Source: Selaginella moellendorffii (taxonomy: Eukaryota > Plantae > Lycopodiophyta). From it: a stretch of DNA of 64,000 nucleotides. A program made the translations under genes and the position numbers. The stretch covers positions 1,053,199-1,117,198 of the forward strand of contig NW_003314309.1 of NCBI RefSeq assembly GCF_000143415.4, written 5' to 3'. This document shows, one piece after another, positions 24,990 to 64,000 of this stretch. Positions within the stretch are counted from its first letter, which is position 1; each line of letters opens with the position of its first letter. The notes beneath the pieces are model-generated. The model had not been told where the DNA came from, made no database searches, and worked only from the letters and a program-made list of their open reading frames with translations.

Positions 24990-25063
24990 GAAATCCATGG
25001 TATGGACCGATTTTCTTATATTCACGTATCAAACTTTCCATCTATCCAGAGCTAAAATGACAG

Positions 25064-28000
25064 TTAATCATCGACCAAAATTTGGAGTTTGACTGGGCGA
25101 TTGAGCAAGCTCTCGAACGCAGCCTCGAGAGCCGCGGCGTGCTCGTGCTGCTGGAACTTTCTAACGAACAGAGGAGACGATCCTATCGTCACGATTGCCG
25201 GCTGCGAGGTCTGTGAGATCGACACGAGTGATCCCTGCCAAAGAAGAACAAACCAACAAGTGAATCAATGAATCGTCTAAGTTCGCGGCAAGTACCTTTT
25301 GTGTCGCGAGAGCCAAGGTTGCTGGAGAGCTTTGAAGCACCGTGGACACTTGCTGCCATAGCTGCTCTAGATCTTCTCCTGGAGCTTGAGCGGGCTCCTT
25401 CGTCTTTGAATCTCTCGAGTTCTTCGTCTTGACTTTCGTAAAGCTCATGATCTTGTGCCAGAGATTTGTCCCTTGATCCGCATCCTCGTTTCCAGCTTCC
25501 TCACCACAGCTGCTGCTGCGCGCATTCTTCTCCAGAAGCTTGCCGGCCCTCCTGCGAATCCACTCCGGATAATCCCCGCTCTGGAAACCATCCGGCGGAG
25601 GAGCCAAGCCGGGAAACAATGCATGCGACGAAGAGAAGTGACACGCTGTAGCGTTCGCAAGCTCGGTGTGAAAGTTCTCGTAGTAGTCTTCCATGGCGAG
25701 TAGAGCTCTTGCGTTTACGTGGTTTGCCAGGTACTCCATCACTGCTCTCAACAAGGCTGCCTCGGTCTCTTGGAAGCCAGTTCTCAGCCGAAAGTCATCC
25801 AGAAGAACGAGCGAACTGCTTGTGACTTTGTCCAGGACCTTTCTTCCATCGGGCCAGTCGACGCTGTAGATTCCGTCCGCAATGGATAGTCGAGCTTCTT
25901 TAGCCGGTACAAAGCTGCCGATCTGTGCCAGCACCTGGATGAGAGCTACTTGTTGTAAGTAGCACGTCTTGCCACTGCCTCTGGGACCGGTGACGATGAG
26001 CAAGTCGGGCCTGTCTTCTACCTTCTTCGAACGACCGCGTCTCGGCTGGTAGCCCAGCGAGCACGAAGTCGGCTGGAAGTCTTTACGTATTTCAACCAGT
26101 GGATGTCTACCATCCACTATAGTGATTTGTCGTCCATCTGGTACTAGCTCTGGCTTGCTGAAATCCCTTGCTGCAGCGATTTCTGCATGAAACAAAACAA
26201 AGGTCGGCAATGGCGTCGTTTTGGAAAAGACATACCAGCGAAGTTGCAAAGGACGTCCAGTGCAGCCAATGCACTACTCGTTTCTTGTAGCGTCAGCAGC
26301 GAGTCTGTAACTTTCTTTCTCAGACTCTCCACAAGGTCCGAACGCTCAGAGATTGTATCGCTCGCTTCGAAACCAATGTCAGCATCAGTTGCGGAACTCC
26401 TTGCCACCTTCAGCAGAAAATACAAACGTAAGGTTCAAGCTCTTAGGCAGCCAAACGGTCAGTGTAGATCATTCAACATTCTATCAAAAGCCGGGACAAA
26501 CCTGAATCTCTTCGGCCAGTTTCTCGGCAAAAGCTTGATGGCGAATAACAGCCGAAAAATAATCATTTCCTGGAAATTCTTCAAGTATCTGAGAAATCCT
26601 GGGTAGCATCAACAGCGAGTCTGCCAAAGCAATAAGCTCGTCCCTGGAAAGCAGCTTGATCAGTACATTAGAAAGATGTTGCAGAGACCCACCAAGAAAG
26701 GGTGGACTGTCGTGCAATACTTCCCGAAAGGTTGGCAACATCCACCATGGTCGAGAGACAGGAACGCAATGCTTCACGAACAGGACTATTTTTTAGGAGA
26801 ACCTGAGGAGCTATTTAGTTGGATAAAAATCATAAGAGTCATTGCTACTGACCTCCACGGCATTTTGGCGTAAAAGAATCGATTCAAGACTTCTTAAAGG
26901 GTGTAACATCCATTGCCTCAGTAAACGAGTACCCATACTAGTTTTAGTTTCGTCCATTGCCCAAAGAAGGGACGCGGTCTCAGTTCTTTTACCTTCGACT
27001 AGCTGGAAATCACAATGATGAACAAGAACAGAATAGAGCTATTTAGTACCTCTAAGTAGCTTCTTACGCCTTCATCAAGACGAAGATAATCTTCGGTTTT
27101 ATACAAAAGTAATTGCCGAAGGGAAAGCTCGTCAAGTGCAAACGCTTGTATTTGCTGAACGTATCTGAGCACGAAAGTGTCACATACACTCCACTATAAA
27201 ACTCGCGATATAACTTAAGCATGCACCTTAGTAAGGCCCTGGCCGCAGAGTCAGTTAAAGACCACTGCTGAATTGCATCGACAGTTTTTTCTCCGATGTA
27301 TGGAAGTAAAAGCTGCACAATAGAAAAATGTCTCATCGTTTACAAAACTATAAAGACCTTACAGTATCATTTGAAATGGGAGAAAACTCTGACGAATCGC
27401 GTGCTACTACGCATACTTCTTCTAAATATGGTCTAATCGCCTGTGATGAGAAAAAACACAAAGATATATCATGAAGGCAAATTCAAGATCAACAAACTCA
27501 CTTGCGAGTTAAATATGGCCTCTCTTGGTTTTAGTCGACCCAGCTCGTCCATCAAAGCGGCCAAACCTTCAGATTGTGTAGCACAAAAATCTCCTGCAAT
27601 AAAGACGTAAGAAAGATACAAATATCATCATTTCAACCAACAGTACCGGTCGCTAAATCACAAAATGCTAGCCCCCAAGAAGAATCAGCGGACACGTTAA
27701 CTGCGACCAAATAATTATTATGTGTCTCGTCTATAATCCCTTCATCGAGAAGCATTCCTGGCGTCAAAACGCAGATAGATTCTTGGACCTCATCACCAAC
27801 CTATAACCATTTCCAAAACAGATATCAGCTTTGTATGCCTACAAAAAGCTTGCACGTACCTTTACAACGCTTATTCCTCTATCGAACAAAATTTTTGTAT
27901 ACACATAAAATTTACACGCTGGAAACCTCGTAACTGGAACTTCGATCTGCGTTTTACATCATCATCGTAAATCAGAGACGGTAAACGTAGCAAGCAACGT

Positions 28001-29777
28001 ACCTCGCCATCTTCGACTGTGCTTTGCCGAATCTTGCACGTTCTAGACAAAGAGATTGCATCTTCAAAAAGAGCCTGTAGCGTCATGTGCATAAAGAAAG
28101 CTCTCAGAGTGCGGAATGTAATACCTCGTAAAAGTCACCAGCTTTTAAGAGGTGAATAAAGCTTGGTCTCTTTCTTTTTGCCTCGACATAGTTCGCAAGA
28201 GCAGGGCTCAAAACTGTAGAATCCACAGATCCGGTATCCAGAAATGTCCTGCTCGACTGCTGCTCCATCTCAACCCTGACCCCTTCCACATCTTCTTCTA
28301 ATACCATCTCTTCCTCCACTTCATCAACCGTGATTTCCAGTTCCAAATCCTCCCAAGGAACGTTAAGCCTATCCTCCTTTGTCAGCTCCTGTGTAGCTGA
28401 TGAATCCGTCACTAACTCCCCTCTATCCATATCTCGGAAAAGCTTGGAGCTGGCGTATACTTCGTCAGCGGTGAAGGCCTTTTCTAAAAACTCACTGGCC
28501 GGAAGCTGAAGTTCGGATACTATTGCCTCCAGCACCGAAGCAAGCATATTCACATCTGCCATGGCGCGATGTGCACGCTCTGTGGAATGCAGACCATATG
28601 CTTCATGTAAAACAGAAAGTTTCAAAGACCGCCAGTTATATCCTGTAGTACGGTTATGAGACGCGAGAAATGGTATTTATAAACACGTACCGAATTTTTT
28701 CTTCGTTTCCCGAGCCAGAGGCATGGAATCTAAAAAGAGCCACCACTCAGGAACTTGTATCCCGCAACTCTGAAACTCTTTAAGAAGAAATGGAACGTCA
28801 AACCTCTTCCCGTTGTGCGCGACAAGGATAACAGGCTCATCACCCTTTCGACGGCTTTCTACAAACTGAATAATGGACGGGCCAACCTCTTTCCAGCTGC
28901 GAGGGAAAAAGAAAGAAAAGATAATGAAGTACGAACACAAAAGTAGTTTTCTTACCTGGGAACATGAGGCTTGTTCACCATCTGATTCGTTATTCCTGTA
29001 ACAGCTGTTATAAGGTAAGGAACAGTCCGGCCGGGATTCACTAGAGCAGAAATGGTACTGCGATCACCCCCAGCAAGATCACGAGCTGCAAACTCTATAA
29101 TGCGATCACCAGCAGCTCTAAAACCTGTTGTCTCGAGGTCGAAAACGATGATCGTCATCTTTGGAGCAGGAATTTCTGAAGTAATGCTGCTGTCACTTGT
29201 GCTGCTAGCCAAAATCTCTTCTTTGCTCCGTAGCAGTACCTCACTTTCCTGTGACGATGCCCCACTTTGCTCCAGGCCTGTTCGCTCCAAGACGCTCGAA
29301 GAAACCTTTAGCTCCATCCCATTGTCAGTTTGAAATCTTACGCTTTCTCCAAGATCTTTGGAGACTTTGGATGTGGAGGTTTCGATCTCGGAGCTCCCGA
29401 TCTCTTCCTCCTCACGTAAAGCTTGATCGGGACTCGAGGATGCCCACGTTGAAAATCTAGAGCGCAAGAACTGGAGCTTGATGTCTCGCAACGATGTCCT
29501 TGACAAGTAACGAGGATGAGGCTTGACGATAAAACACCTGAATGGCCCGATCGATCGACTGGAAATCACTGGAAACGGCAAAAATTTACCTGGAAGAACA
29601 GCACGAACACGAAGAAGGAACAATTCGCCCGACGAAGAGCCTTGCTCCTGCGAATTCGTGCTTGAGGAGTCCATAGCACGCAATGCCGGACTCCATATTC
29701 TCCACGATCTTCCTGACGATGCCGGGGCTCATATTCGCAGCTCACGGGCACTCACCGAGGAGAATCGCTGCCCGCAT
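25064..29777 (-). CDS. DPD1-type DEDDh 3'-5' exonuclease fused to a cyanobacterial-type MutS1 (clamp-less, degenerate ATPase); probably organelle-targeted; many short exons
   Basis: Exonuclease motifs FDLETTG, IIEFAA, VAHNGKRFD, AHRAMAD. The same exon runs on to MutS-I (YVEAKRK...GDFYE|ALFEDA). Later exons give LTPG, NNYLVAV..WGLAFCDLATG, SLLWAMD.T.T.MG.RLLRQWMLHPL, AALDVLC, GRHPLVE, TGPRGSGKTCYLQQ..AQIGSFVPA. Start at ATG 29777 (with a 43-nt intron) is tentative; alternative ATG at 29674. Confidence 0.85.
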
Positions 29778-55517: not shown

Positions 55518-57002
55518 TTTTTATGAGCTCAAGAGCAAGTTCACATAATAAAGTATAACAGGTAATCAAAATTTATACCCAAGGAATGAATGCAAAGTCA
55601 TTGCACTTAAATGTGTACCCACTCGGATCATCATTTTTATCTCTGCGTATGCAACGAAACTAGTTGCCCAATCTCATTGGATAGTATTCGCCAAAACTCA
55701 TTCTTTGATACTAAATGTAGTGCACATGGTTTTCATCTTTTATCCTATAGTGATTTACCATAAGATAACCACAAAGCGAAATCTAAACCTCCATGTGCCA
55801 TGTGTCATATGCCATATGCCATATGCCACATGTCTAAAGGACAGCGGAGTGGAACCCGAGTTTCATTGCCTTAGGCCACTAAACAAAAGAATAGTGCCAA
55901 ACTCCCAAGTATGGAACCAAGGAGCAATGGCACTGGAGCACGTAATAACTCCCGAGCATATAGCTCAAGGAGCAAAGGGACAAGAGCAGGAAGCAATTTG
56001 AATCAGTCTGTAACTGACTAAATTTTTCCATTTTACTTTAGTCACTTAACCGCATCTCCAACCACTTGAAGGAGTCTCACTCACAACCTCCATAAGTCCT
56101 ATTTCGGACTTGGGCTTGCTAGCCCCTAGAATGGCATCCCCGCCACTCAACCTTTGCACTTGGTCTAAGTGCCCCACGTGTCCAATCCCATGACCAACAC
56201 CCCAAGGTACCACTAACATATCAGCCCGTTATGCTAAGGCCATGCCCATTCACCTTGGTCACACTGGTGATCTAACACCACTTGCATCACAGTCCCGTCT
56301 CTCAAAGACTGGGCCATCCAGCCACGAGTGATCATCCCAGATCCACTCCTTAGCATCCTTAGGATGCCCACAGACATGGGGAATAGCCTTCCCCAACATC
56401 CCTTTATCAGTTCCTACCAAGTCCCTTTCCCGTCCATGGTTATGTTCACCAACACTGCCACTAGGTCGAGGCCCGCAGGCCCGGCCACTAAGTCCCATTG
56501 TCCCCTGGGACTTCCTCACCATGTAACTGTATCCGTAGTCACTACACTAGAAGATTGCTCCTCCTCCTTTCCCCCATTGGGACTTCGGGACAACATTTCG
56601 AAACACTGTGGCCCTACGTGAGCCCCATAGGTACTCTCCCCACCTTCCGCCTTTAGGTGCTCTAGCCATGGGCTTAGAGCGAGGTTCCATTGAGCCACAC
56701 TAGGTATCCAAGTAGGTAGTGCCACCCACACTTGGACTGGGAGCATCGGCCAGATGATCTCCCGGGGGAACTAGAGCCGGCTCTTGAACACTTCACCAAG
56801 CTACCCCGCTTGTCGGTCCATGTTCACTTTAGTCTTGGACTTCCCAGTGGTCAACTCATCACCCAACACTGGGTGCAGCCTCTCTGGGCCAAACTGGCCT
56901 TTCCTGGCCAAACTGGCTCCATTGCAGTCCTCCCCCTACTATACTTTTGGAGCTCACCAAACCCCCCAGAGTCTAGGAGACGAACGCTTTAGGCTTTCAC
57001 CC

Positions 57003-57110
57003 TCTCAGACTCGAATTCGGACTTGGACTCGGACTCAGACTCGGACTCGGACTCGGCCTCGGCCTCGGTCTCGGCCTCGGCCTCGGTCTCGGCCTTGGTC
57101 TCGGTCCCGA

Positions 57111-57157
<47 letters not shown>

Positions 57158-57500
57158 ACCTCGGACTCCATCTCGGGTCCATCTCGGACTCCATCTCGGA
57201 TTCCATCTCGGACTCTATCTCGGACTCCATCTCGGACTCCATCTCGGACTCCGTCTCGGTCCATCTCGGACTCCATCTCGGACTCCGTCTCGGTCTATCT
57301 CAGACTTTGTCTCGGTCTATCTCAGACTTTGTCTCGGACTCCATCTCGGACTCCGTCTCAGTCCATCTCGGACTCCATCTCGGAGTCCGTCTCGGTCCAC
57401 TTCGGACTCCATCTCGGGCTCCACTTCGGACTCCATCTCGGGTCCATCTCGAGCTCCACTTCGGGTCCATCTCGGACTCCACTTCGGGTCCATCTCGGAC
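57003..57500. repeat. Hexamer/12-mer minisatellite (TCGGAC, TCGGTC, GGACTCCATCTC) in the left LTR
   Basis: Direct tandem array; source of many spurious low-complexity ORFs. Confidence 0.95.
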
Positions 57501-60500
57501 ACTTCCACATGTCATGTGTTGGTTCTTTTGGGTCCCTTTTTGGAGCCTTGCTTATTGCTCGCTTCATGCTCGTTCCTTGAGCACTCTGTTGGGAGTTCCA
57601 CTCCCGCTCTCAACCTCTCAAGTCGGAGCCTTTTAGTCCAAACGTGTTACGCTCGTTTGACTTTTGCTTCGGCCACTACCACATGGCACCCTTTCGGCTC
57701 CACTTTGGGGCTTAGGGATTTGTGTCTCACAACTCCACCACCCATAGACGAAGTTCGATGTCCTCATCGAACGGTAAACCCTTTTATAAAGTAACACCCA
57801 CATGTATTACCGTTTCCATCCTTGGACCCCGGCCAATATTTGTCTATTGGTTTGACACCAAAGGCGCACCATGCCTTGTCCATCCTTCAAGGAGCATAGT
57901 CTCTCCAATATAGAGACTCATTCGACCACCTGGGGTGGTTTACTCTCTTTTATTGGTTCAGTTCTTGTTAAACCCGTTAGGGACTCCCTCTCTAACTCAA
58001 TTCCACTACTTATTCTCGAGTAGTCTCAAATTCCATCGACATAACTTTGCACTTTGGAACTTTTAGTTTTGACTTCTCAGAGTCAATTTCCTAGGTGTCT
58101 CCGACACCTTACGTTGCACATGGTGCAACTCCACTTCCCTATCCTAGGAAGTTCTTTACTTGAGGATACCATCATCCTCTCTCTGATATCGTGCCACCTT
58201 TGACACTAAGTTTCAGTTATCATAATTGGTGCTAGGGCTACCCACGGCCCTATTATTTGGCTACCTTCCCACTCCCCCCTTTGGAGCATCCACTCTGCCA
58301 AATCGGAGCAGTTGGGAATCCACCCTTAGGGAAACTTTGCCTTTCCCACAATCTGTTAGCACCCAACACATTAGTGTTCTCGGCCTAACTTTGCCATTTG
58401 GATTCTTTCCCAGGATTCTTATGGCTCTTTTCTTAGCCACTAGTCTTTTGCTCCTATCCTTGATTGTTGCACCTAGCAACACAGGATTGCTACCTCCATT
58501 TTCGAGGTTTCCTTTCAGTTCCATAGCAAACACTTTACTTTGCCAAGTCCAGAGGGTGTTCACCCCTAGTACGTCTCTTTAACATTTTCTGCTGTGGGCT
58601 CTATCCATGGCCCAACTTTTGAGATCCTCCCTTGGATCTCTTATAAAGACTACCTTCCTCGGACTTACTATGCCATAGCATTAACATAGTTCATTTCCCT
58701 TAGATGTTCTTCTCGCTTGGTCACCTTAACCAAACCACACCATTATCAATAGTTCAAATCAACACTTTGAACTTAAAATCATATTCCTTAACCCAAACAA
58801 AGACTTTGTCTTTGTTTAACCACAAGATCACCTAGTGATCTCATCCTGACCCCTTAATAGGTCTACCCATAGGAACTAGGTCTTCCAGACCCTTCTATGT
58901 TGTTGACTATGACCCCGGGGGCATCCCCCACACTTGGCGGTGTGCCCAAGCCAGCCCTTCCGGCCAAGAATCCATAGCAACTGAGACTGAGTGTCCCTAT
59001 CTCATTCACCACGTCCTTGGTGCCCTTTGCACCAAAGTGTTCAAGTTAGATATGCCAAGCTTTCACTCTAAGCAATCTAACTGTGCATCATGACTCCGAG
59101 GCATCCCTCACTTGGCGGTGTGCCCAAACTAGTCTCCTCACTGAGAGTCCATGACCACCGAAAAATGAGTGTCCTCATATTCCAAACCATCACCATGCCC
59201 TAGTGATTTGGGACTTGAACCCAAGCACTAGAGGGTCGGGACTTGAACCCAACCTCTGTATATGCATCTACGGACGGCATCACACCGGATGCCTGGCGTG
59301 GCTCCCTACGCCGGTGCTCCAACTTATTTTTAAAGCGCGCTACAGATCACAGCTTAGGAACCTAGTTCCTCCACACTGCTAAGTCCTCTCGTTTGACAAG
59401 TCTATGATCATGCATGGACTCCTCCATGCTCGGCCCCATGGCCCACCCTTTTTTGAAGTTATCACCTTCAACTAGGGCATTTGTTCCCCCGACTTGCCAA
59501 TCTCGCTTAGCAAATCCTCCGACAACTGTAACATGGTTCCTGCATAAGCGTGAAAGTCCTTGGCCATTGACTTTCGTTCAAAACCCTTTCTTTGAACACT
59601 CAAGAACTACTTCCCTAACCTTGATAGCTTTGCCTCATGGCAAGCTTCAAGACCACGCTTCTGCTGCACCATTCTGATTTCGCGCATTTCATGAACCATT
59701 TACCCTTGGCCTTTCTAGGTACTAAGCTACTTAGAATCGTTTTTGAGAACCTTGAAGGAACTCTGTCCCTTAGCTTGCTAAGGCCTCCCTTTTTGCAAGC
59801 TTTATAGTTGCCATATAGTCTAACATGGACAATTCTATATTTTAGACTCTCTATGGCATCACGGTTGCTAGCAACAACATCCTCGAGCACCCTCTTGATT
59901 CTCCACTCCCAACTTGCATAACCACCATTGGATATGCCCTTTGATTTCTATGGTTCAGTTCTATCCCAATACTACTTGCCTTTTGGCCCCATATGTTTCC
60001 TTTGGTTATTCTCCTCCAGACTAGGAGGATAGCTTTGCACATTTTACTATGCCTTAGCAAGTATTTTTAGGGATGAACCTACCCGATAGCCTAGGGAGTG
60101 GTTCCTCAATCTTGGGCATGCTCACCTTATAATCCCACACATTGGGATTAACATTGCTGCTTATGGGCCCTTACATGCCCATCACTAGCCTTGCCAAAAT
60201 TCCATTTTTGGCTTTGTTCAATTCGGATAGACAGTCTTCTCCTGTTTCCACAATCTTGGACATTTGGATAGCACCTACTATCCATCATTCGCTAGGGACT
60301 TAGTCCTTTGGGCCTTATCTATTGCCCTTGCGACACGAAATACCACCTCCTAGTGTTCTAGAGTGCTTGGGTGTCCCAATGATGGCCTCCTGATAATGAG
60401 CATTCCCGTTTACGACATTGACTTACTATATCGCAACATAAGCAATTTATCCCCCATAAGGGTATATCTAACTTCTTTATGCCATTAAGAAGTCTTGGGT

Positions 60501-60540
60501 AGCTACCTTCTACCCATTTAACCAATTGTCTTGCACCTCT

Positions 60541-60626
60541 TGCTTAGTTGCCCCATAGTTGTCAAGTCCTACAACTCATTGCTTGCTTAGTTGCCCCATA
60601 GTTGTCAAGTCCTACAACTCATTGCT
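60541..60626. repeat. Perfect 43-bp tandem duplication inside the LTR element
   Basis: TGCTTAGTTGCCCCATAGTTGTCAAGTCCTACAACTCATTGCT x2. Confidence 0.9.
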
Positions 60627-62828
60627 TGGTGCTACCACACCTCCATCATTATCTGGGTCACCACACTCCAACCGCATGCCTTCCAGCTTAGGCCATGCCG
60701 TTCCCGCTTCCGTTGGGATTCCCTTGGCAAGGGGTTCTTATGAACCCACCATCATAACCTCCAGGTATCACACCTTGGCACATTTGGTGTCTCCACACCA
60801 TCGGCCCCACAAGCCTACCCTTATGACACTATTTATTAGTGTCTAGGTCTTTGCCAAGACCAATATAGTTGTTCCTCATGCTAACTATCTGTTAGCACCG
60901 CACCATAGTGTTTGCACCCAACTCTGGGCCAAAGTTGCTTTCTTCTGGGAACATCTTTCCCACAACTTTAGTATGGCACCTTCTGCCATCAATGAGATAC
61001 CTACTGTTCTCATACTTGGATCTTATGATCCTCCCCATACCTCATGGGGCACCATACACTTCGGTCCAAATGCTCTAACCAATTCCTTAGGACCATTCCC
61101 TGACTCCGCTTGAGTCATCCAGCATTTTGGACTTTGCTAATCCAACAACTTGCGAGGTCTCAGTCTTAGAGGTGCCAACTTACTGGAATACAACTTCTTG
61201 TATTCATGTCCTACTCACAAGGACAACTTTTGCAAGTGTTACTTTGACACTTGATGATTTTCTTGGGGCTAACCTTTGCCCCTTAGGACTATTTATCCAT
61301 GTGATGAGGATAGCAGCTCATCTTTAAGTACACCCCCAATCCCTTGGGTTGTTCCAGCATTTATTAGAGGTAACCCCGGCTACCATTTCAAGGACTGGTG
61401 TCCTCTTCTATATTTGACCTCCCACAGTCAACAATTCCAGTCTCAAATTTATGAGTACCAGCCTCAACCATATAAGGGTAATCTTGTGACTCCTTTATTG
61501 TTTTGGAGTCTGCATCTTTCCCGTGATCCCAACTATAGTTGTTTACCACAACTACATTAGCTCGTTTATTGCGTCAAACGCTCATCTGGATCACATCCTC
61601 AACACTCTGAGGAACCCTTATACTGTTCCCAAGATCCCAAAGTCGTTCCCTTACTGCCCCTCTTCCATCCACCACATCGTGCACAAGTTCACGCATGAAC
61701 TTGAGTGGAGAGCCATGTCCTCTCGACATGCTACTCCTCGAGGATAGGTCCATATCTAGGACCTTCCAACTCCAATACAAGTGGTGATATGCTTTAGCAC
61801 CAATAAAAGTCGGACTAAGGAACAGCTCTGATACCAAGTTGTAACCGACTAAATTTTTCCATTTTATTTTAGTCACTTAACCGCATCTCCGACCACTTGA
61901 AGGAGTCTCACTCACAACCTCCATAAGTCCTATTTCGGACTTGGGCTTGCTAGCCCCTAGAATGGCATCCCCGCCACTCAACCTTTGCACTTGGTCTAAG
62001 TGCCCCACGTGTCCGATCCCATGACTAACACCCCAAGGTACCACTAACATATCAGCCCGTTACGCTAAGGCCATGCCCATTCACCTTGGTCACACTAGTG
62101 ATCTAACACCACTTGCATCACAATCTTGTCTCTCAAAGACTGGGCCATCCATTCACGAGTGATCATCCCAGATCCACTCCTTAGCATCCTTAGGATGCCC
62201 ACAGACATGGGGAATAGCCTTCCCCAACATCCCTTTATTAGTTCCTACCAAGTCCCTTTCCCGTCCATGGTTATGTTCACCAACACTGCCACTAGATTGA
62301 GGCCCGCAGGCCCGGCCACTAAGTCCCATTGTGGGACTTCCTCACCATGTAACTGTATCCGTAGTCACTACACTAGAAGACTGCTCCTCCTCCTTTCCCC
62401 CATTGGGACTTCGGGACAACATTTCGGAACACCGTGGCTCTACGTGAGCCCCATAGGTACTCTCCCCACCTTCCGCCTTTAGGTGCTCTAGCCATGGGCT
62501 TAGAGCGAGGTCCATTGAGCCACACCAGGTATCCAAGTAGGTAGTGCCACCCACACTTGGACTGGGAGCATCGGCCAGATGATCTCCCGGGGGAACTAGA
62601 GCCGGCTCTTGAACACTTCACCAAGCTACCCCGCTTGTCGGTCCGTGTTCACTCTAGTCTTGGACTTCCCAGTGGTCAACTCATCACCCAACACTGGGTG
62701 TAGCCTCTCTGGGCCAAACAGGCCTTTCCTGGCCAAATTGGCTCCACTGCAGTCCTCCCCCTACTATACTTTTGGAGCTCACCAAACCCCCCAGGGTCTG
62801 GGAGACGAATGCTTTGGGCTTTCACCCT

Positions 62829-63262
62829 CTCAGACTTGAACTCGGACTTGGACTCGGACTTGGACTCGGACTCGGACTCGGACTCGGACTCGGACTCGGA
62901 CTCGGACTCGGACTCGGCCTCGGTCTCGGTCCTGATCTCGGTCTCAGTCTCGGTCTCGGTCTCGGTCTCGACCTCGGACTCCATCTCGGGTCCATCTCGG
63001 ACTCCATCTCGGATTCCATCTCGGACTCCATCTCGGACTCCATCTCGGACTCCGTCTCGGACTCCGTCTCGGACTCCATCTCGGACTCCGTCTCGGACTC
63101 CATCTCGGACTCCGTCTCGGACTCCATCTCGGACTCCGTCTCGGACTCCATCTCGGACTCCGTCTTGGTCCATCTCGGACTCCATCTCGGACTCCGTCTC
63201 GGTCCATCTCGAGCTCCACTTCGGGTCCATCTCGGACTCCACTTCGGGTCCATCTTGGACAC
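62829..63262. repeat. Hexamer/12-mer minisatellite in the right LTR
   Basis: Same units as 57003-57500 but with different copy numbers. Confidence 0.95.
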
Positions 63263-64000
63263 TTCCACTTGTCATGTGTTGGTCCTTTTGGGTCCCTTTT
63301 TGGAGCCTCGCTTATTGCTCGCTTCATGCTCGTTCCTTGAGCACTCCGTTGGGAGTTCCACTCCCGCTCTCAACCTCTCAAGTCGGAGCCTTTTAGTCCA
63401 AACGTGTTATGCTCGTTTGGCTTTTGCTTTGGCCACTACCATGTGGCACCCTTTCGGCTCCACTTTGGGGCTTAGGGATTTGTGTCTCACATAGTCCTAG
63501 AGCAACCAGCATCCCAGTGCCAAGACCAACACGCAAAATGGAGCCAAACAGAGTTTGGCACTATTTCAGCATACTAATGATCTAATGCAAGGATACGGGT
63601 ACTCCACCAGCTGATATGAAATGGAACTTGGGCTTTGACCCAAGCCAAATACAAAACAAGGACAAGCACGCAAGCAAGAACTAAACTATGCCTCAAATTA
63701 GTCAACCATACCTGATCTACCCACTATCCCCCTCCCCTTGAGGAACACATGTTTTGGGCTTTCACCCCAAGCCACCTTTAATACTAGGAGTTAGTCTCTA
63801 GGACAAGCTTGAAACTTACTAAATATGGAATGTTCTTAAATTGCAAATTTGGACATGGGACGAACACTATTGTATTCAGGATAATTTTTACATTCCATAA
63901 ATATACTAAATGAGCAAATCTAGACACTTTCCATAATTAACATGTGGGACCGAAATGAAACTAACACAAAGAGCATGATAGTGAGGGTGTTTGGCAAACA

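What the first reader, a model, noticed from the sequence alone, without database searches (positions are those of the whole stretch)
25560..26600. The MutS module has lost its clamp and has a crippled ATPase but keeps the mismatch-binding FxE
Seen: only ~50 residues and a 94-nt intron (26408-26501) lie between KLAEEIQ and AALDVLC, leaving no room for the lever/clamp (domain IV). Walker A is TGPRGSGKT (canonical TGPNxxGKS). The RIG..DD....STFM.EM signature is replaced by the short DGIYSVDWPDGRKV. Walker B reads LLDDFRLRT instead of DE.GRGT, and FATHY reads LAMEDYY. The last large exon is open with no stops, which argues for remodelling rather than pseudogenisation. Inference: the protein cannot form an ATP-driven sliding clamp or recruit MutL canonically. 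If the host is Selaginella, whose organelle genomes are known to be unusually GC-rich and heavily C-to-U edited, altered organellar repair is a testable link.
Basis: partly seen in the sequence, partly recalled or inferred. Interest (0 to 1): 0.8.

Follow-up and report, generated by a model that had tools for sequence, protein, structure and literature searches.

The report
Clamp-less MutS1 fused to DPD1 exonuclease
The spikemoss Selaginella moellendorffii expresses its copy of a plant DNA-repair fusion protein (DPD1 exonuclease joined to a plastid-derived MutS1) that has cleanly lost the DNA-encircling clamp and key ATPase residues, yet still looks selectively maintained; the gene family is already known, and this stripped-down variant is what appears to be new.

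Summary
Window 25064-29732 (minus strand) holds a 17-exon, 1254-codon gene. It is the Selaginella moellendorffii orthologue of the DPD1-MutS1 fusion described by Sloan et al. 2024.

Spliced transcript contigs from four studies remove all 16 introns exactly, including the 94-nt intron, so cDNA does not restore the clamp.

Compared with liverwort, lycophyte and fern orthologues and with E. coli MutS, the protein differs as follows:
- It lacks E. coli residues 409-514, which are the whole clamp plus the lever tips.
- It lacks residues 656-671, the segment leading into the trans-acting signature helix.
- It carries N616R, E694D and GRGT>RLRT, and Tyr or Asp in place of His728.
- It keeps Phe36/Glu38, the Walker A lysine, all five DEDDh exonuclease residues and the C-terminal STICHEL-like domain.

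Intron positions match Marchantia. The loss is an in-frame deletion of about 95 codons and one intron between two conserved introns.

The remaining core is predicted to fold as MutS (pLDDT 89). Two alleles differ less at nonsynonymous sites than in introns.

The most likely reading is a maintained, non-sliding, hydrolysis-impaired MutS scaffold for the fused exonuclease. Ferns show parallel ATPase erosion. The proposed link to GC-rich, heavily edited organelle genomes is untested. It is a new variant of a known kind.

The parts
25064..29732 (-). Whole DPD1-MutS1 gene: 17 exons, 1254 codons plus stop. Introns are 47-62 nt, except one of 94 nt.
   Evidence: Manual GT-AG model. All 16 introns are seen as joints in spliced contigs of public runs. 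It is 98.8% identical to the syntenic allele GL377578.1 / SELMODRAFT_440920.
29538..29589 (-). 52-nt intron in the presequence region. It sets the start codon at 29732 (MSPGIVRK...).
   Evidence: Joint 29535/29588 (cut +2) in three runs. It matches the P0001 model.
28497..29152 (-). DPD1-type DEDDh 3'-5' exonuclease domain (aa 177-359, two introns inside). The catalytic residues lie in FDLETTG, HNGKRFD and HRAMAD.
   Evidence: Pfam RNase_T E 5e-22. Motif positions.
28125..28139 (-). GDFYE: mismatch-binding Phe-X-Glu (F481, E483), at the end of exon 4.
   Evidence: Aligns with E. coli F36/E38.
26502..26643 (-). Exon 14, the outgoing lever helix of domain III, ending in KLAEEIQ.
   Evidence: The exon end coincides with the Marchantia intron after aa 1227.
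26408..26501 (-). 94-nt intron, the longest in the gene. It marks the upstream edge of the clamp deletion.
   Evidence: Spliced in all four runs. It is orthologous to the Marchantia intron after ...DRVQ.
26236..26407 (-). Exon 15 (57 codons): a 13-residue remnant (VARSSATDADIGF) plus the returning lever helix, ending in AALDVLCNFA. It stands where Marchantia has two exons (56 + 96 codons) and one intron.
   Evidence: Alignment. Exon map of Marchantia locus L005. The AF2 model shows a short helical hairpin.
25296..26182 (-). Exon 16: MutS domain V (ATPase), followed by a disordered linker.
   Evidence: Pfam MutS_V E 5e-20 over the first 46 profile positions only. PDB phmmer alignment to MSH3/MutS shows a 16-residue gap. 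AF2 core pLDDT is about 73-98 per 10-residue block. The exon is contiguous in transcript contigs.
25965..25988 (-). Walker A GPRGSGKT. The GxxxxGK[ST] pattern is kept, with N616R and S621T.
25836..25877 (-). DGIYSVDWPDGRKV: the site of the 16-residue deletion (E. coli 656-671) that removes S668/T669/F670.
25779..25805 (-). Walker B LLDDFRLRT: D693 is kept, E694D, and GRGT is replaced by RLRT (R697L).
25680..25700 (-). LAMEDYY in place of FATHY (T727M; His728 replaced by Tyr or Asp depending on the alignment).
25064..25373 (-). C-terminal DnaA_N-like / STICHEL-type domain (aa 1173-1254), split by the 61-nt intron 25235-25295, then the stop codon.
   Evidence: Pfam PF23007 E 2.8e-07, also found in Riccia and Marchantia. 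The intron is spliced in the X4 contig.

Best explanation
This is the S. moellendorffii orthologue of the plant DPD1-MutS1 fusion, a cyanobacterial-type MutS1 acquired from the plastid with an N-terminal DEDDh exonuclease. It is in a derived, expressed and still constrained form.

Shown:
- An in-frame genomic deletion between two conserved introns removed about 95 codons and one intron. This took out the clamp (domain IV) and the tips of both lever helices.
- A second, 16-codon deletion removed the loop and N-terminus of the signature helix.
- The catalytic Walker-B Glu is Asp. Arg697 and His728 are replaced.
- The mismatch wedge (Phe/Glu), the P-loop Lys, the Walker-B Asp, the five exonuclease residues and the C-terminal STICHEL-like domain are retained.

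Inferred:
- The MutS core still dimerises and binds DNA through domain I, and probably still binds nucleotide.
- It cannot close around DNA or run the ATP-hydrolysis-driven switch to a sliding clamp.
- It therefore acts as a static DNA- or lesion-binding scaffold that positions the fused 3'-5' exonuclease (and whatever the C-terminal domain recruits) on organellar DNA. It does not act as a canonical mismatch-repair motor.
For: Family and orthology:
- The domain architecture RNase_T + MutS I/II/III/V + PF23007 is shared with Riccia and Marchantia.
- The plant MutS1 clade has 100/100 support.
- The best bacterial relatives are cyanobacterial.
- 15 of 16 introns coincide with Marchantia introns.
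- The family is described in PMC12292046.

Losses:
- P0001 is the only one of 120 listed relatives without PF05190.
- There is no remnant elsewhere in the window.

Real, not an artefact:
- Spliced contigs from four studies.
- The same structure in a second assembly allele.

Maintained:
- The ORF is intact.
- The AF2 model of aa 450-1057 has pLDDT 89.2 and pTM 0.92, and matches Taq and E. coli MutS with TMq 0.75-0.86.
- The ATPase core is confidently folded.
- Between alleles there are 9 nonsynonymous differences in 1539 sites in the MutS part, and 1 in 506 in domain V. Introns have 15 in 904. Fisher p is about 0.01 for each comparison.
- DPD1 and the C-terminal domain are as conserved as in other lineages.

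Mechanistic basis (PMC4521584):
- The N-terminus of the signature helix contacts the gamma-phosphate in trans.
- The clamp domains cross in the sliding-clamp state.
- E694A cannot hydrolyse ATP.
Against: - No biochemistry was done. E694D might retain some hydrolysis.
- The Selaginella branch for domains III-V is about 2.7 times longer than that of Diphasiastrum (1.38 vs 0.51). This fits relaxed constraint as well as a change of function.
- The polymorphism test rests on only 29 coding differences, and pN/pS against synonymous sites alone is not significant (p = 0.11).
- The v1 assembly allele has a 1-bp deletion at the equivalent of 25587 that would truncate the protein. However, a transcript contig carrying the linked allele-specific SNP has no gap there.
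- AF2 confidence is partly inherited from the MutS alignment.
- Organelle targeting was not tested.
- No other Selaginella or Isoetes sequence was available to show that the derived state is old and conserved.
Confidence: 0.65

Rival explanations
1. The MutS module is decaying. Selection acts only on the DPD1 exonuclease and perhaps the C-terminal domain. The MutS part is a degenerating spacer on its way to the complete loss seen in seed plants, where DPD1 stands alone. The clamp and signature deletions are neutral erosion, not adaptation.
For: - The terminal branch for domains III-V is long (1.38 vs 0.44-0.51).
- Identity of MutS domains to Marchantia is 31-43%, against 44-57% (domains II-V) in Diphasiastrum and 46-72% in the canonical land-plant sequence P0308, taxon unknown. 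DPD1 stays at 55%.
- Catalytic residues were lost in parallel in ferns.
- Seed plants lost MutS1 altogether (PMC12292046).
- The frameshifted v1 allele.
Against: - About 670 MutS codons remain open across 13 exons, and every splice site is used.
- Both deletions are in frame.
- Phe/Glu, the P-loop Lys and the Walker-B Asp are kept.
- Nonsynonymous differences in the MutS part and in domain V are significantly rarer than intron differences, while the presequence and linkers look neutral.
- The four remaining domains are predicted to fold confidently as MutS.
Confidence: 0.28
2. Assembly or annotation artefact: the clamp and signature segments exist in the real gene but are missing from this assembly, or are hidden in mis-called introns.
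For: The public model P0001 does contain one artefactual 135-nt 'intron', so the annotation of this gene is not flawless.
Against: - Two independent assemblies give the same exon structure.
- Transcript contigs from four studies join 26502 to 26407 directly and read exon 16 contiguously.
- The interval holds only 94 nt.
- There is no clamp-like coding sequence anywhere in 64 kb.
Confidence: 0.02

Closest known systems
Plant DPD1-MutS1 (cyanobacterial-like MutS1 of liverworts, mosses, lycophytes and ferns; Sloan et al. 2024, Plant Cell, PMC12292046; 'chloroplastic MSH1' of Hofstatter & Lahr 2021, PMC7884376)
   Same: - N-terminal DEDDh DPD1 exonuclease with all catalytic residues.
- MutS1-type domains I, II, III and V.
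- The conserved C-terminal domain.
- Shared intron positions with Marchantia.
- Cyanobacterial affinity.
- FxE retained.
   Different: [quoted passage not shown]
- This copy lacks domain IV and the lever tips, lacks the signature segment, and has E694D, R697L and no His728.
- Neither paper mentions Selaginella.
Bacterial MutS (E. coli, Thermus aquaticus; PDB 1E3M, 1EWQ, 5AKB)
   Same: - Overall fold of domains I, II, III and V (TMq 0.75-0.86).
- The Phe-X-Glu wedge, the P-loop lysine and the Walker-B aspartate.
   Different: - No clamp and shortened levers.
- No signature Ser/Thr, no catalytic Glu, no switch His.
- Shortened helix-turn-helix region.
- Fused exonuclease and C-terminal domain.
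- No cognate MutL in the lineage (from the literature).
Fern DPD1-MutS1 (Adiantum, Ceratopteris, Pteridium)
   Same: Parallel erosion of ATPase residues: N616P, E694G or E694D, His728 to Gln/Arg in most, and the signature Thr changed.
   Different: Ferns keep the clamp and the signature segment but have lost Glu38 (and Phe36 in Ceratopteris). Selaginella shows the reverse pattern.
Angiosperm DPD1 (AT5G26940), a stand-alone organellar exonuclease
   Same: An orthologous exonuclease domain. It represents the end state in which no MutS module is left.
   Different: Selaginella still carries about 670 residues of MutS and the C-terminal domain.

Membership tests
Plant DPD1-MutS1 fusion | N-terminal DPD1-type DEDDh exonuclease with Asp, Glu, Asp, His, Asp catalytic residues | tested here: met
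   Pfam RNase_T 1-163/164, E 5e-22. FDLETTG, HNGKRFD and HRAMAD are present.
Plant DPD1-MutS1 fusion | MutS1-type core of cyanobacterial affinity that groups with other plant MutS1 | tested here: met
   The plant clade has 100/100 support against three bacterial outgroups (the outgroup sampling is thin). The top bacterial hits are Nostoc, Microcoleus and Synechococcus at 39-43% identity.
Plant DPD1-MutS1 fusion | Orthologous gene structure | tested here: met
   15 of 16 introns fall within 1 residue of Marchantia introns.
Plant DPD1-MutS1 fusion | Full set of MutS1 domains I-V, as stated for the family | tested here: not met
   No PF05190. E. coli 409-514 is unmatched.
Plant DPD1-MutS1 fusion | Plastid and/or mitochondrial targeting | not tested
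   No targeting predictor was available. The N-terminal roughly 90 residues are Ser/Arg-rich, but this was not evaluated.
Canonical MutS1 mismatch-repair ATPase | Phe-X-Glu mismatch-binding motif | tested here: met
   F481/E483 align with F36/E38.
Canonical MutS1 mismatch-repair ATPase | Clamp domain IV on long levers that encircle DNA | tested here: not met
   Deleted. The AF2 model shows a short hairpin only.
Canonical MutS1 mismatch-repair ATPase | Walker A GxxxxGK[ST] | tested here: met
   GPRGSGKT, with K620 conserved and N616R.
Canonical MutS1 mismatch-repair ATPase | Walker B Asp-Glu with catalytic Glu694, followed by GRGT | tested here: not met
   DD and RLRT.
Canonical MutS1 mismatch-repair ATPase | Trans-acting signature (Ser668/Thr669, N-terminus of helix 670-684) | tested here: not met
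   Residues 656-671 are deleted.
Canonical MutS1 mismatch-repair ATPase | Switch His728 | tested here: not met
   LAMEDYY. There is Tyr or Asp at the aligned position, and the local alignment is ambiguous by 1-2 residues.
Canonical MutS1 mismatch-repair ATPase | ATP hydrolysis, sliding-clamp formation and MutL recruitment | not testable with these tools
   This needs biochemistry. Viridiplantae are reported to lack a cyanobacterial-type MutL (PMC12292046).

The most novel reading that the evidence does not exclude
Selaginella carries a natural separation-of-function MutS. It would be a mismatch sensor with no clamp and no ATP switch, still able to direct a covalently attached 3'-5' exonuclease. 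That would make it a minimal one-protein excision device. Its altered or weakened activity would then contribute to the exceptional GC-rich, heavily C-to-U-edited, fast-evolving organelle genomes of the genus. More broadly, vascular plants would be dismantling MutS1 stepwise: ferns lost the FxE motif and the catalytic Glu, Selaginella lost the clamp and the signature, and seed plants lost the whole module and kept DPD1 alone.
Probability: 0.12. Interest if true: 0.8.

Novelty: new variant of a known kind. Interest (0 to 1): 0.5.

Why it matters
DPD1-MutS1 was recognised only recently and has no assigned function. The key paper generalises that plant copies keep all MutS1 domains and ATPase elements. 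This gene is a clear, expressed counter-example.

Together with the fern copies, it shows that different vascular-plant lineages have discarded different parts of the mismatch-repair machinery while keeping the exonuclease and the C-terminal domain. That narrows what the fusion can be doing in these lineages: it is not classical MutS-MutL repair.

It also provides a ready-made natural mutant (clamp and signature deleted, FxE intact) for asking which MutS activities the fused exonuclease needs. Finally, it gives a concrete candidate gene to test against Selaginella's unusual organelle mutation spectrum.

Tried and rejected
1. My first start codon (29674) was wrong. Transcript contigs show a 52-nt intron and a start at 29732.
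2. The public model P0001 removes 45 codons (VNARALLAMEDYY...DGFQ) as a 135-nt intron. I rejected this because exon 16 is contiguous in the contigs. The model appears to dodge a 1-bp deletion in the v1 allele.
3. A hidden clamp exon or a relocated clamp: tblastn with eight orthologous clamp segments and seven signature segments found nothing in 64 kb.
4. A second gene copy: L003/P0002 is only a 440-bp duplicated fragment in an unrelated context.
5. I searched for other Selaginella or Isoetes orthologues to date the losses. I used one exhaustive profile-free search and three word-indexed searches, with the full protein, with exon 16 and with region 700-1057. None was found, so a between-species dN/dS was impossible.
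6. The Diphasiastrum genomic locus could not be fetched because the gene range exceeds 100 kb.
7. The organism of the unlabelled relative P0010 (E694A, H728D) could not be identified from its run accession.
8. The 13-residue VARSSATDADIGF stretch aligns weakly with the first clamp strand (ERTGxxSLKVGF). I do not claim this as homology.
Full report
**Gene and organism.**
The finding lies in a minus-strand gene spanning window 25064-29732. I assembled it by hand from open frames and GT-AG sites. I then corrected the 5' end using transcript evidence. The final model has 17 exons and 1254 codons. Introns are 47-62 nt, except one of 94 nt.

An exhaustive protein search with exon 16 returned SELMODRAFT_440920 of Selaginella moellendorffii (P0001) at 100% identity over the aligned stretches. 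Its locus in assembly GCA_000143415.2 is syntenic with the window, sharing the UNC13-like, HAD hydrolase, V-ATPase E and argC neighbours. It is 98.8% identical over the gene, so it is an allele or a second assembly of the same locus.

**What the gene is.**
Pfam gives RNase_T (a DEDDh exonuclease), MutS I, II, III and V, and a C-terminal DnaA_N-like/STICHEL domain, PF23007. The same architecture, with MutS_IV in addition, occurs in several other land plants:
- Riccia and Marchantia;
- Adiantum, Ceratopteris and Pteridium;
- Diphasiastrum, where the gene is split into two models;
- several unlabelled transcript assemblies.

This is the DPD1-MutS1 family described by Sloan et al. 2024 (PMC12292046) and called 'chloroplastic MSH1' by Hofstatter & Lahr 2021 (PMC7884376). 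It is a cyanobacterial-like MutS1 acquired from the plastid, fused in Viridiplantae to the organellar exonuclease DPD1, and lost in seed plants.

My data agree with that placement:
- The plant sequences form a 100/100 clade.
- The best bacterial relatives of residues 700-1057 are cyanobacterial.
- 15 of the 16 Selaginella introns fall within one residue of Marchantia introns.

Neither paper mentions Selaginella. [quoted passage not shown]

**Checking the observation.**
I aligned the protein with eleven plant orthologues, two Firmicute MutS proteins and E. coli MutS (taken from NC_000913.3). The Selaginella protein alone shows the following:
- It lacks E. coli residues 409-514, apart from a 13-residue stretch. 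That is the entire clamp (444-503) plus the distal parts of both lever helices.
- It lacks residues 656-671, the loop and first residues leading into the signature helix, including Ser668, Thr669 and Phe670.
- It has further substitutions: N616R, S621T, E694D, G696R/R697L/G698R, T727M, and Tyr or Asp in place of His728.
- It has small deletions in the helix-turn-helix region.

The following are retained:
- Phe36 and Glu38 (F481, E483);
- Gly614, Gly619, Lys620 and Asp693;
- the five exonuclease catalytic residues.

HMMER against PDB sequences shows the same 16-residue gap against MSH3 and MutS. In the two protein-database lists that report precomputed Pfam domains, P0001 is the only full-length relative without PF05190.

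**Is it real?**
I laid contigs of four public runs from four studies on 25000-29750. The runs are only guessed to be RNA, but the contigs are spliced, so they derive from transcripts. They join every exon pair exactly as modelled, including 26502 to 26407 across the 94-nt intron in all four runs. They read exon 16 without interruption.

tblastn with orthologous clamp and signature segments finds nothing elsewhere in the 64-kb window.

**How the clamp was lost.**
The 94-nt intron is orthologous to the Marchantia intron after aa 1227 (...DRVQ|GMLV...). The next Selaginella intron is orthologous to the Marchantia intron after ...CNFA. Between these two introns Marchantia has two exons (56 and 96 codons) and one intron. 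Selaginella has a single 57-codon exon.

The loss is therefore an in-frame genomic deletion of about 95 codons together with one intron. The surviving upstream intron is the longest in the gene.

**Decay or remodelling?**

*Evidence for maintenance:*
- The ORF is intact over 17 exons, and all splice sites are used.
- The AF2 model of aa 450-1057 has mean pLDDT 89.2 and pTM 0.92. The levers are reduced to a short helical hairpin with a low-confidence tip. The model superposes on Taq and E. coli MutS with query-normalised TM 0.75-0.86.
- Exon 16 alone gives a confident P-loop core that matches MutS/MSH3 ATPase domains, followed by a disordered linker.
- The window and the v1 allele differ by 19 nonsynonymous and 10 synonymous substitutions, and by 15 substitutions in 904 intron sites.
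- Nonsynonymous density is lower than intron density for the whole gene, for the MutS part (9 in 1539) and for domain V (1 in 506). Fisher p is about 0.007-0.01 for each.
- The presequence and linkers look neutral.

*Evidence against, or cautions:*
- The counts are small, and pN/pS against synonymous sites alone (0.57) is not significant.
- The Selaginella branch for domains III-V is about 2.7 times longer than that of Diphasiastrum.
- MutS domains are 31-43% identical to Marchantia, against 44-57% (domains II-V) in Diphasiastrum. DPD1 (55%) and the C-terminal domain (50%) are as conserved as in other lineages.
- The v1 allele has a 1-bp deletion (TTT to TT) at the equivalent of 25587 that would truncate the protein. 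The P0001 model hides it with a 135-nt 'intron' that the transcripts do not support.
- However, a transcript contig carrying the allele-specific SNP at 25657 covers 25587 without a gap. The deletion may therefore be an assembly error or a rare allele.

**Mechanism.**
Established knowledge of MutS (PMC4521584) gives three relevant points:
- The N-terminus of the signature helix (670-684) contacts the gamma-phosphate of ATP bound to the other subunit.
- ATP binding tilts the subunits so that the clamp domains cross and DNA is pushed into a new channel. This is the sliding clamp that loads MutL.
- E694A cannot hydrolyse ATP.

With the clamp and lever tips gone, the signature N-terminus deleted, Glu694 replaced by Asp and Arg697/His728 lost, this protein can hardly form a DNA-encircling, ATP-gated clamp. 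With the P-loop lysine and Walker-B aspartate intact, it may still bind nucleotide. With Phe/Glu and a well-predicted domain I, it may still engage distorted DNA.

My best reading (confidence 0.65) is a static, dimeric DNA- or lesion-binding scaffold that positions the fused DPD1 exonuclease, and the partner of the C-terminal domain, on organellar DNA. These functional steps are inference, and none was tested.

The main rival (0.28) is that the MutS part is eroding neutrally on the way to the seed-plant state, where only DPD1 remains.

**Context beyond the finding.**
- Ferns keep the clamp and the signature segment but have E38Q, N616P, E694G (Asp in Ceratopteris) and His728 to Gln/Arg in most copies.
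- Diphasiastrum has T669A, T699A and H728Y.
- Another unlabelled lineage (P0010) has E694A and H728D.
- Liverworts and the canonical land-plant sequence P0308 (taxon unknown) are fully canonical.

So loss of canonical ATPase chemistry is recurrent in this family, which the published description does not note.

The proposed link to Selaginella's GC-rich, heavily edited organelle genomes is untested. The mitochondrial DNA is 68% GC with 2,139 C-to-U editing sites (PMC5654404). S. moellendorffii also retains plant MSH1 (PMC10487979).

**Verdict.**
The family is known. The clamp-less, signature-less but FxE-retaining and expressed variant appears undescribed in the literature I could search. It is a new variant of a known kind, of moderate interest.

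Noticed in passing
window 25579-25713 (equivalent in L002); P0001: The public model SELMODRAFT_440920 removes 45 codons of the ATPase domain as a 135-nt in-frame 'intron'. The v1 allele has a 1-bp deletion (TTT to TT) at the equivalent of 25587, which this pseudo-intron hides. Transcript contigs read straight through, with no gap and no splice.
   Followed up: partly
L003:5998-6437 (GL377601.1), equivalent to window 25258-25697: A 440-bp fragment of the gene's 3' part (97.5% identical) is duplicated into an unrelated locus and annotated as part of SELMODRAFT_417901 (P0002). It is a gene fragment, not a second copy.
   Followed up: partly
P0009, P0318, P0152, P0153, P0306, P0007, P0010, P0304: Fern DPD1-MutS1 copies have independently lost the Walker-B Glu (Gly or Asp), Asn616 and, in most, His728, as well as Glu38. 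An unlabelled lineage (P0010) has E694A and H728D. Diphasiastrum has T669A and H728Y. The family paper states that the ATPase elements are retained.
   Followed up: partly
window 25064-25373; P0006, P0151, P0308 C-termini: A conserved C-terminal domain of about 80 residues (Pfam PF23007, DnaA_N-like of STICHEL/DnaX-like proteins) ends the fusion protein in Selaginella, liverworts, ferns and Diphasiastrum. It is not mentioned in Sloan et al. 2024 (0 hits for STICHEL or DnaX).
   Followed up: partly
window 24999-25048 and 25049-26182, + strand: The upstream HAD-hydrolase gene (+ strand) has a 3'-UTR intron of about 50 nt. Contigs joined to its 3' end continue, unspliced, over the last MutS1 exons. 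This suggests convergent overlapping transcripts, but the contigs carry no strand information.
   Followed up: no
window 25375 and 25427: In-frame allelic indels (+CTC, -3 nt) occur in the disordered linker between the ATPase and the C-terminal domain, in transcripts of two runs. There are at least three haplotypes among public samples.
   Followed up: no
window 56000-64000: This stretch has a strongly negative GC skew (-0.2 to -0.28). It shows 74-86% similarity to sequence upstream of the L003 fragment, so it is probably a dispersed repeat or gene family.
   Followed up: no
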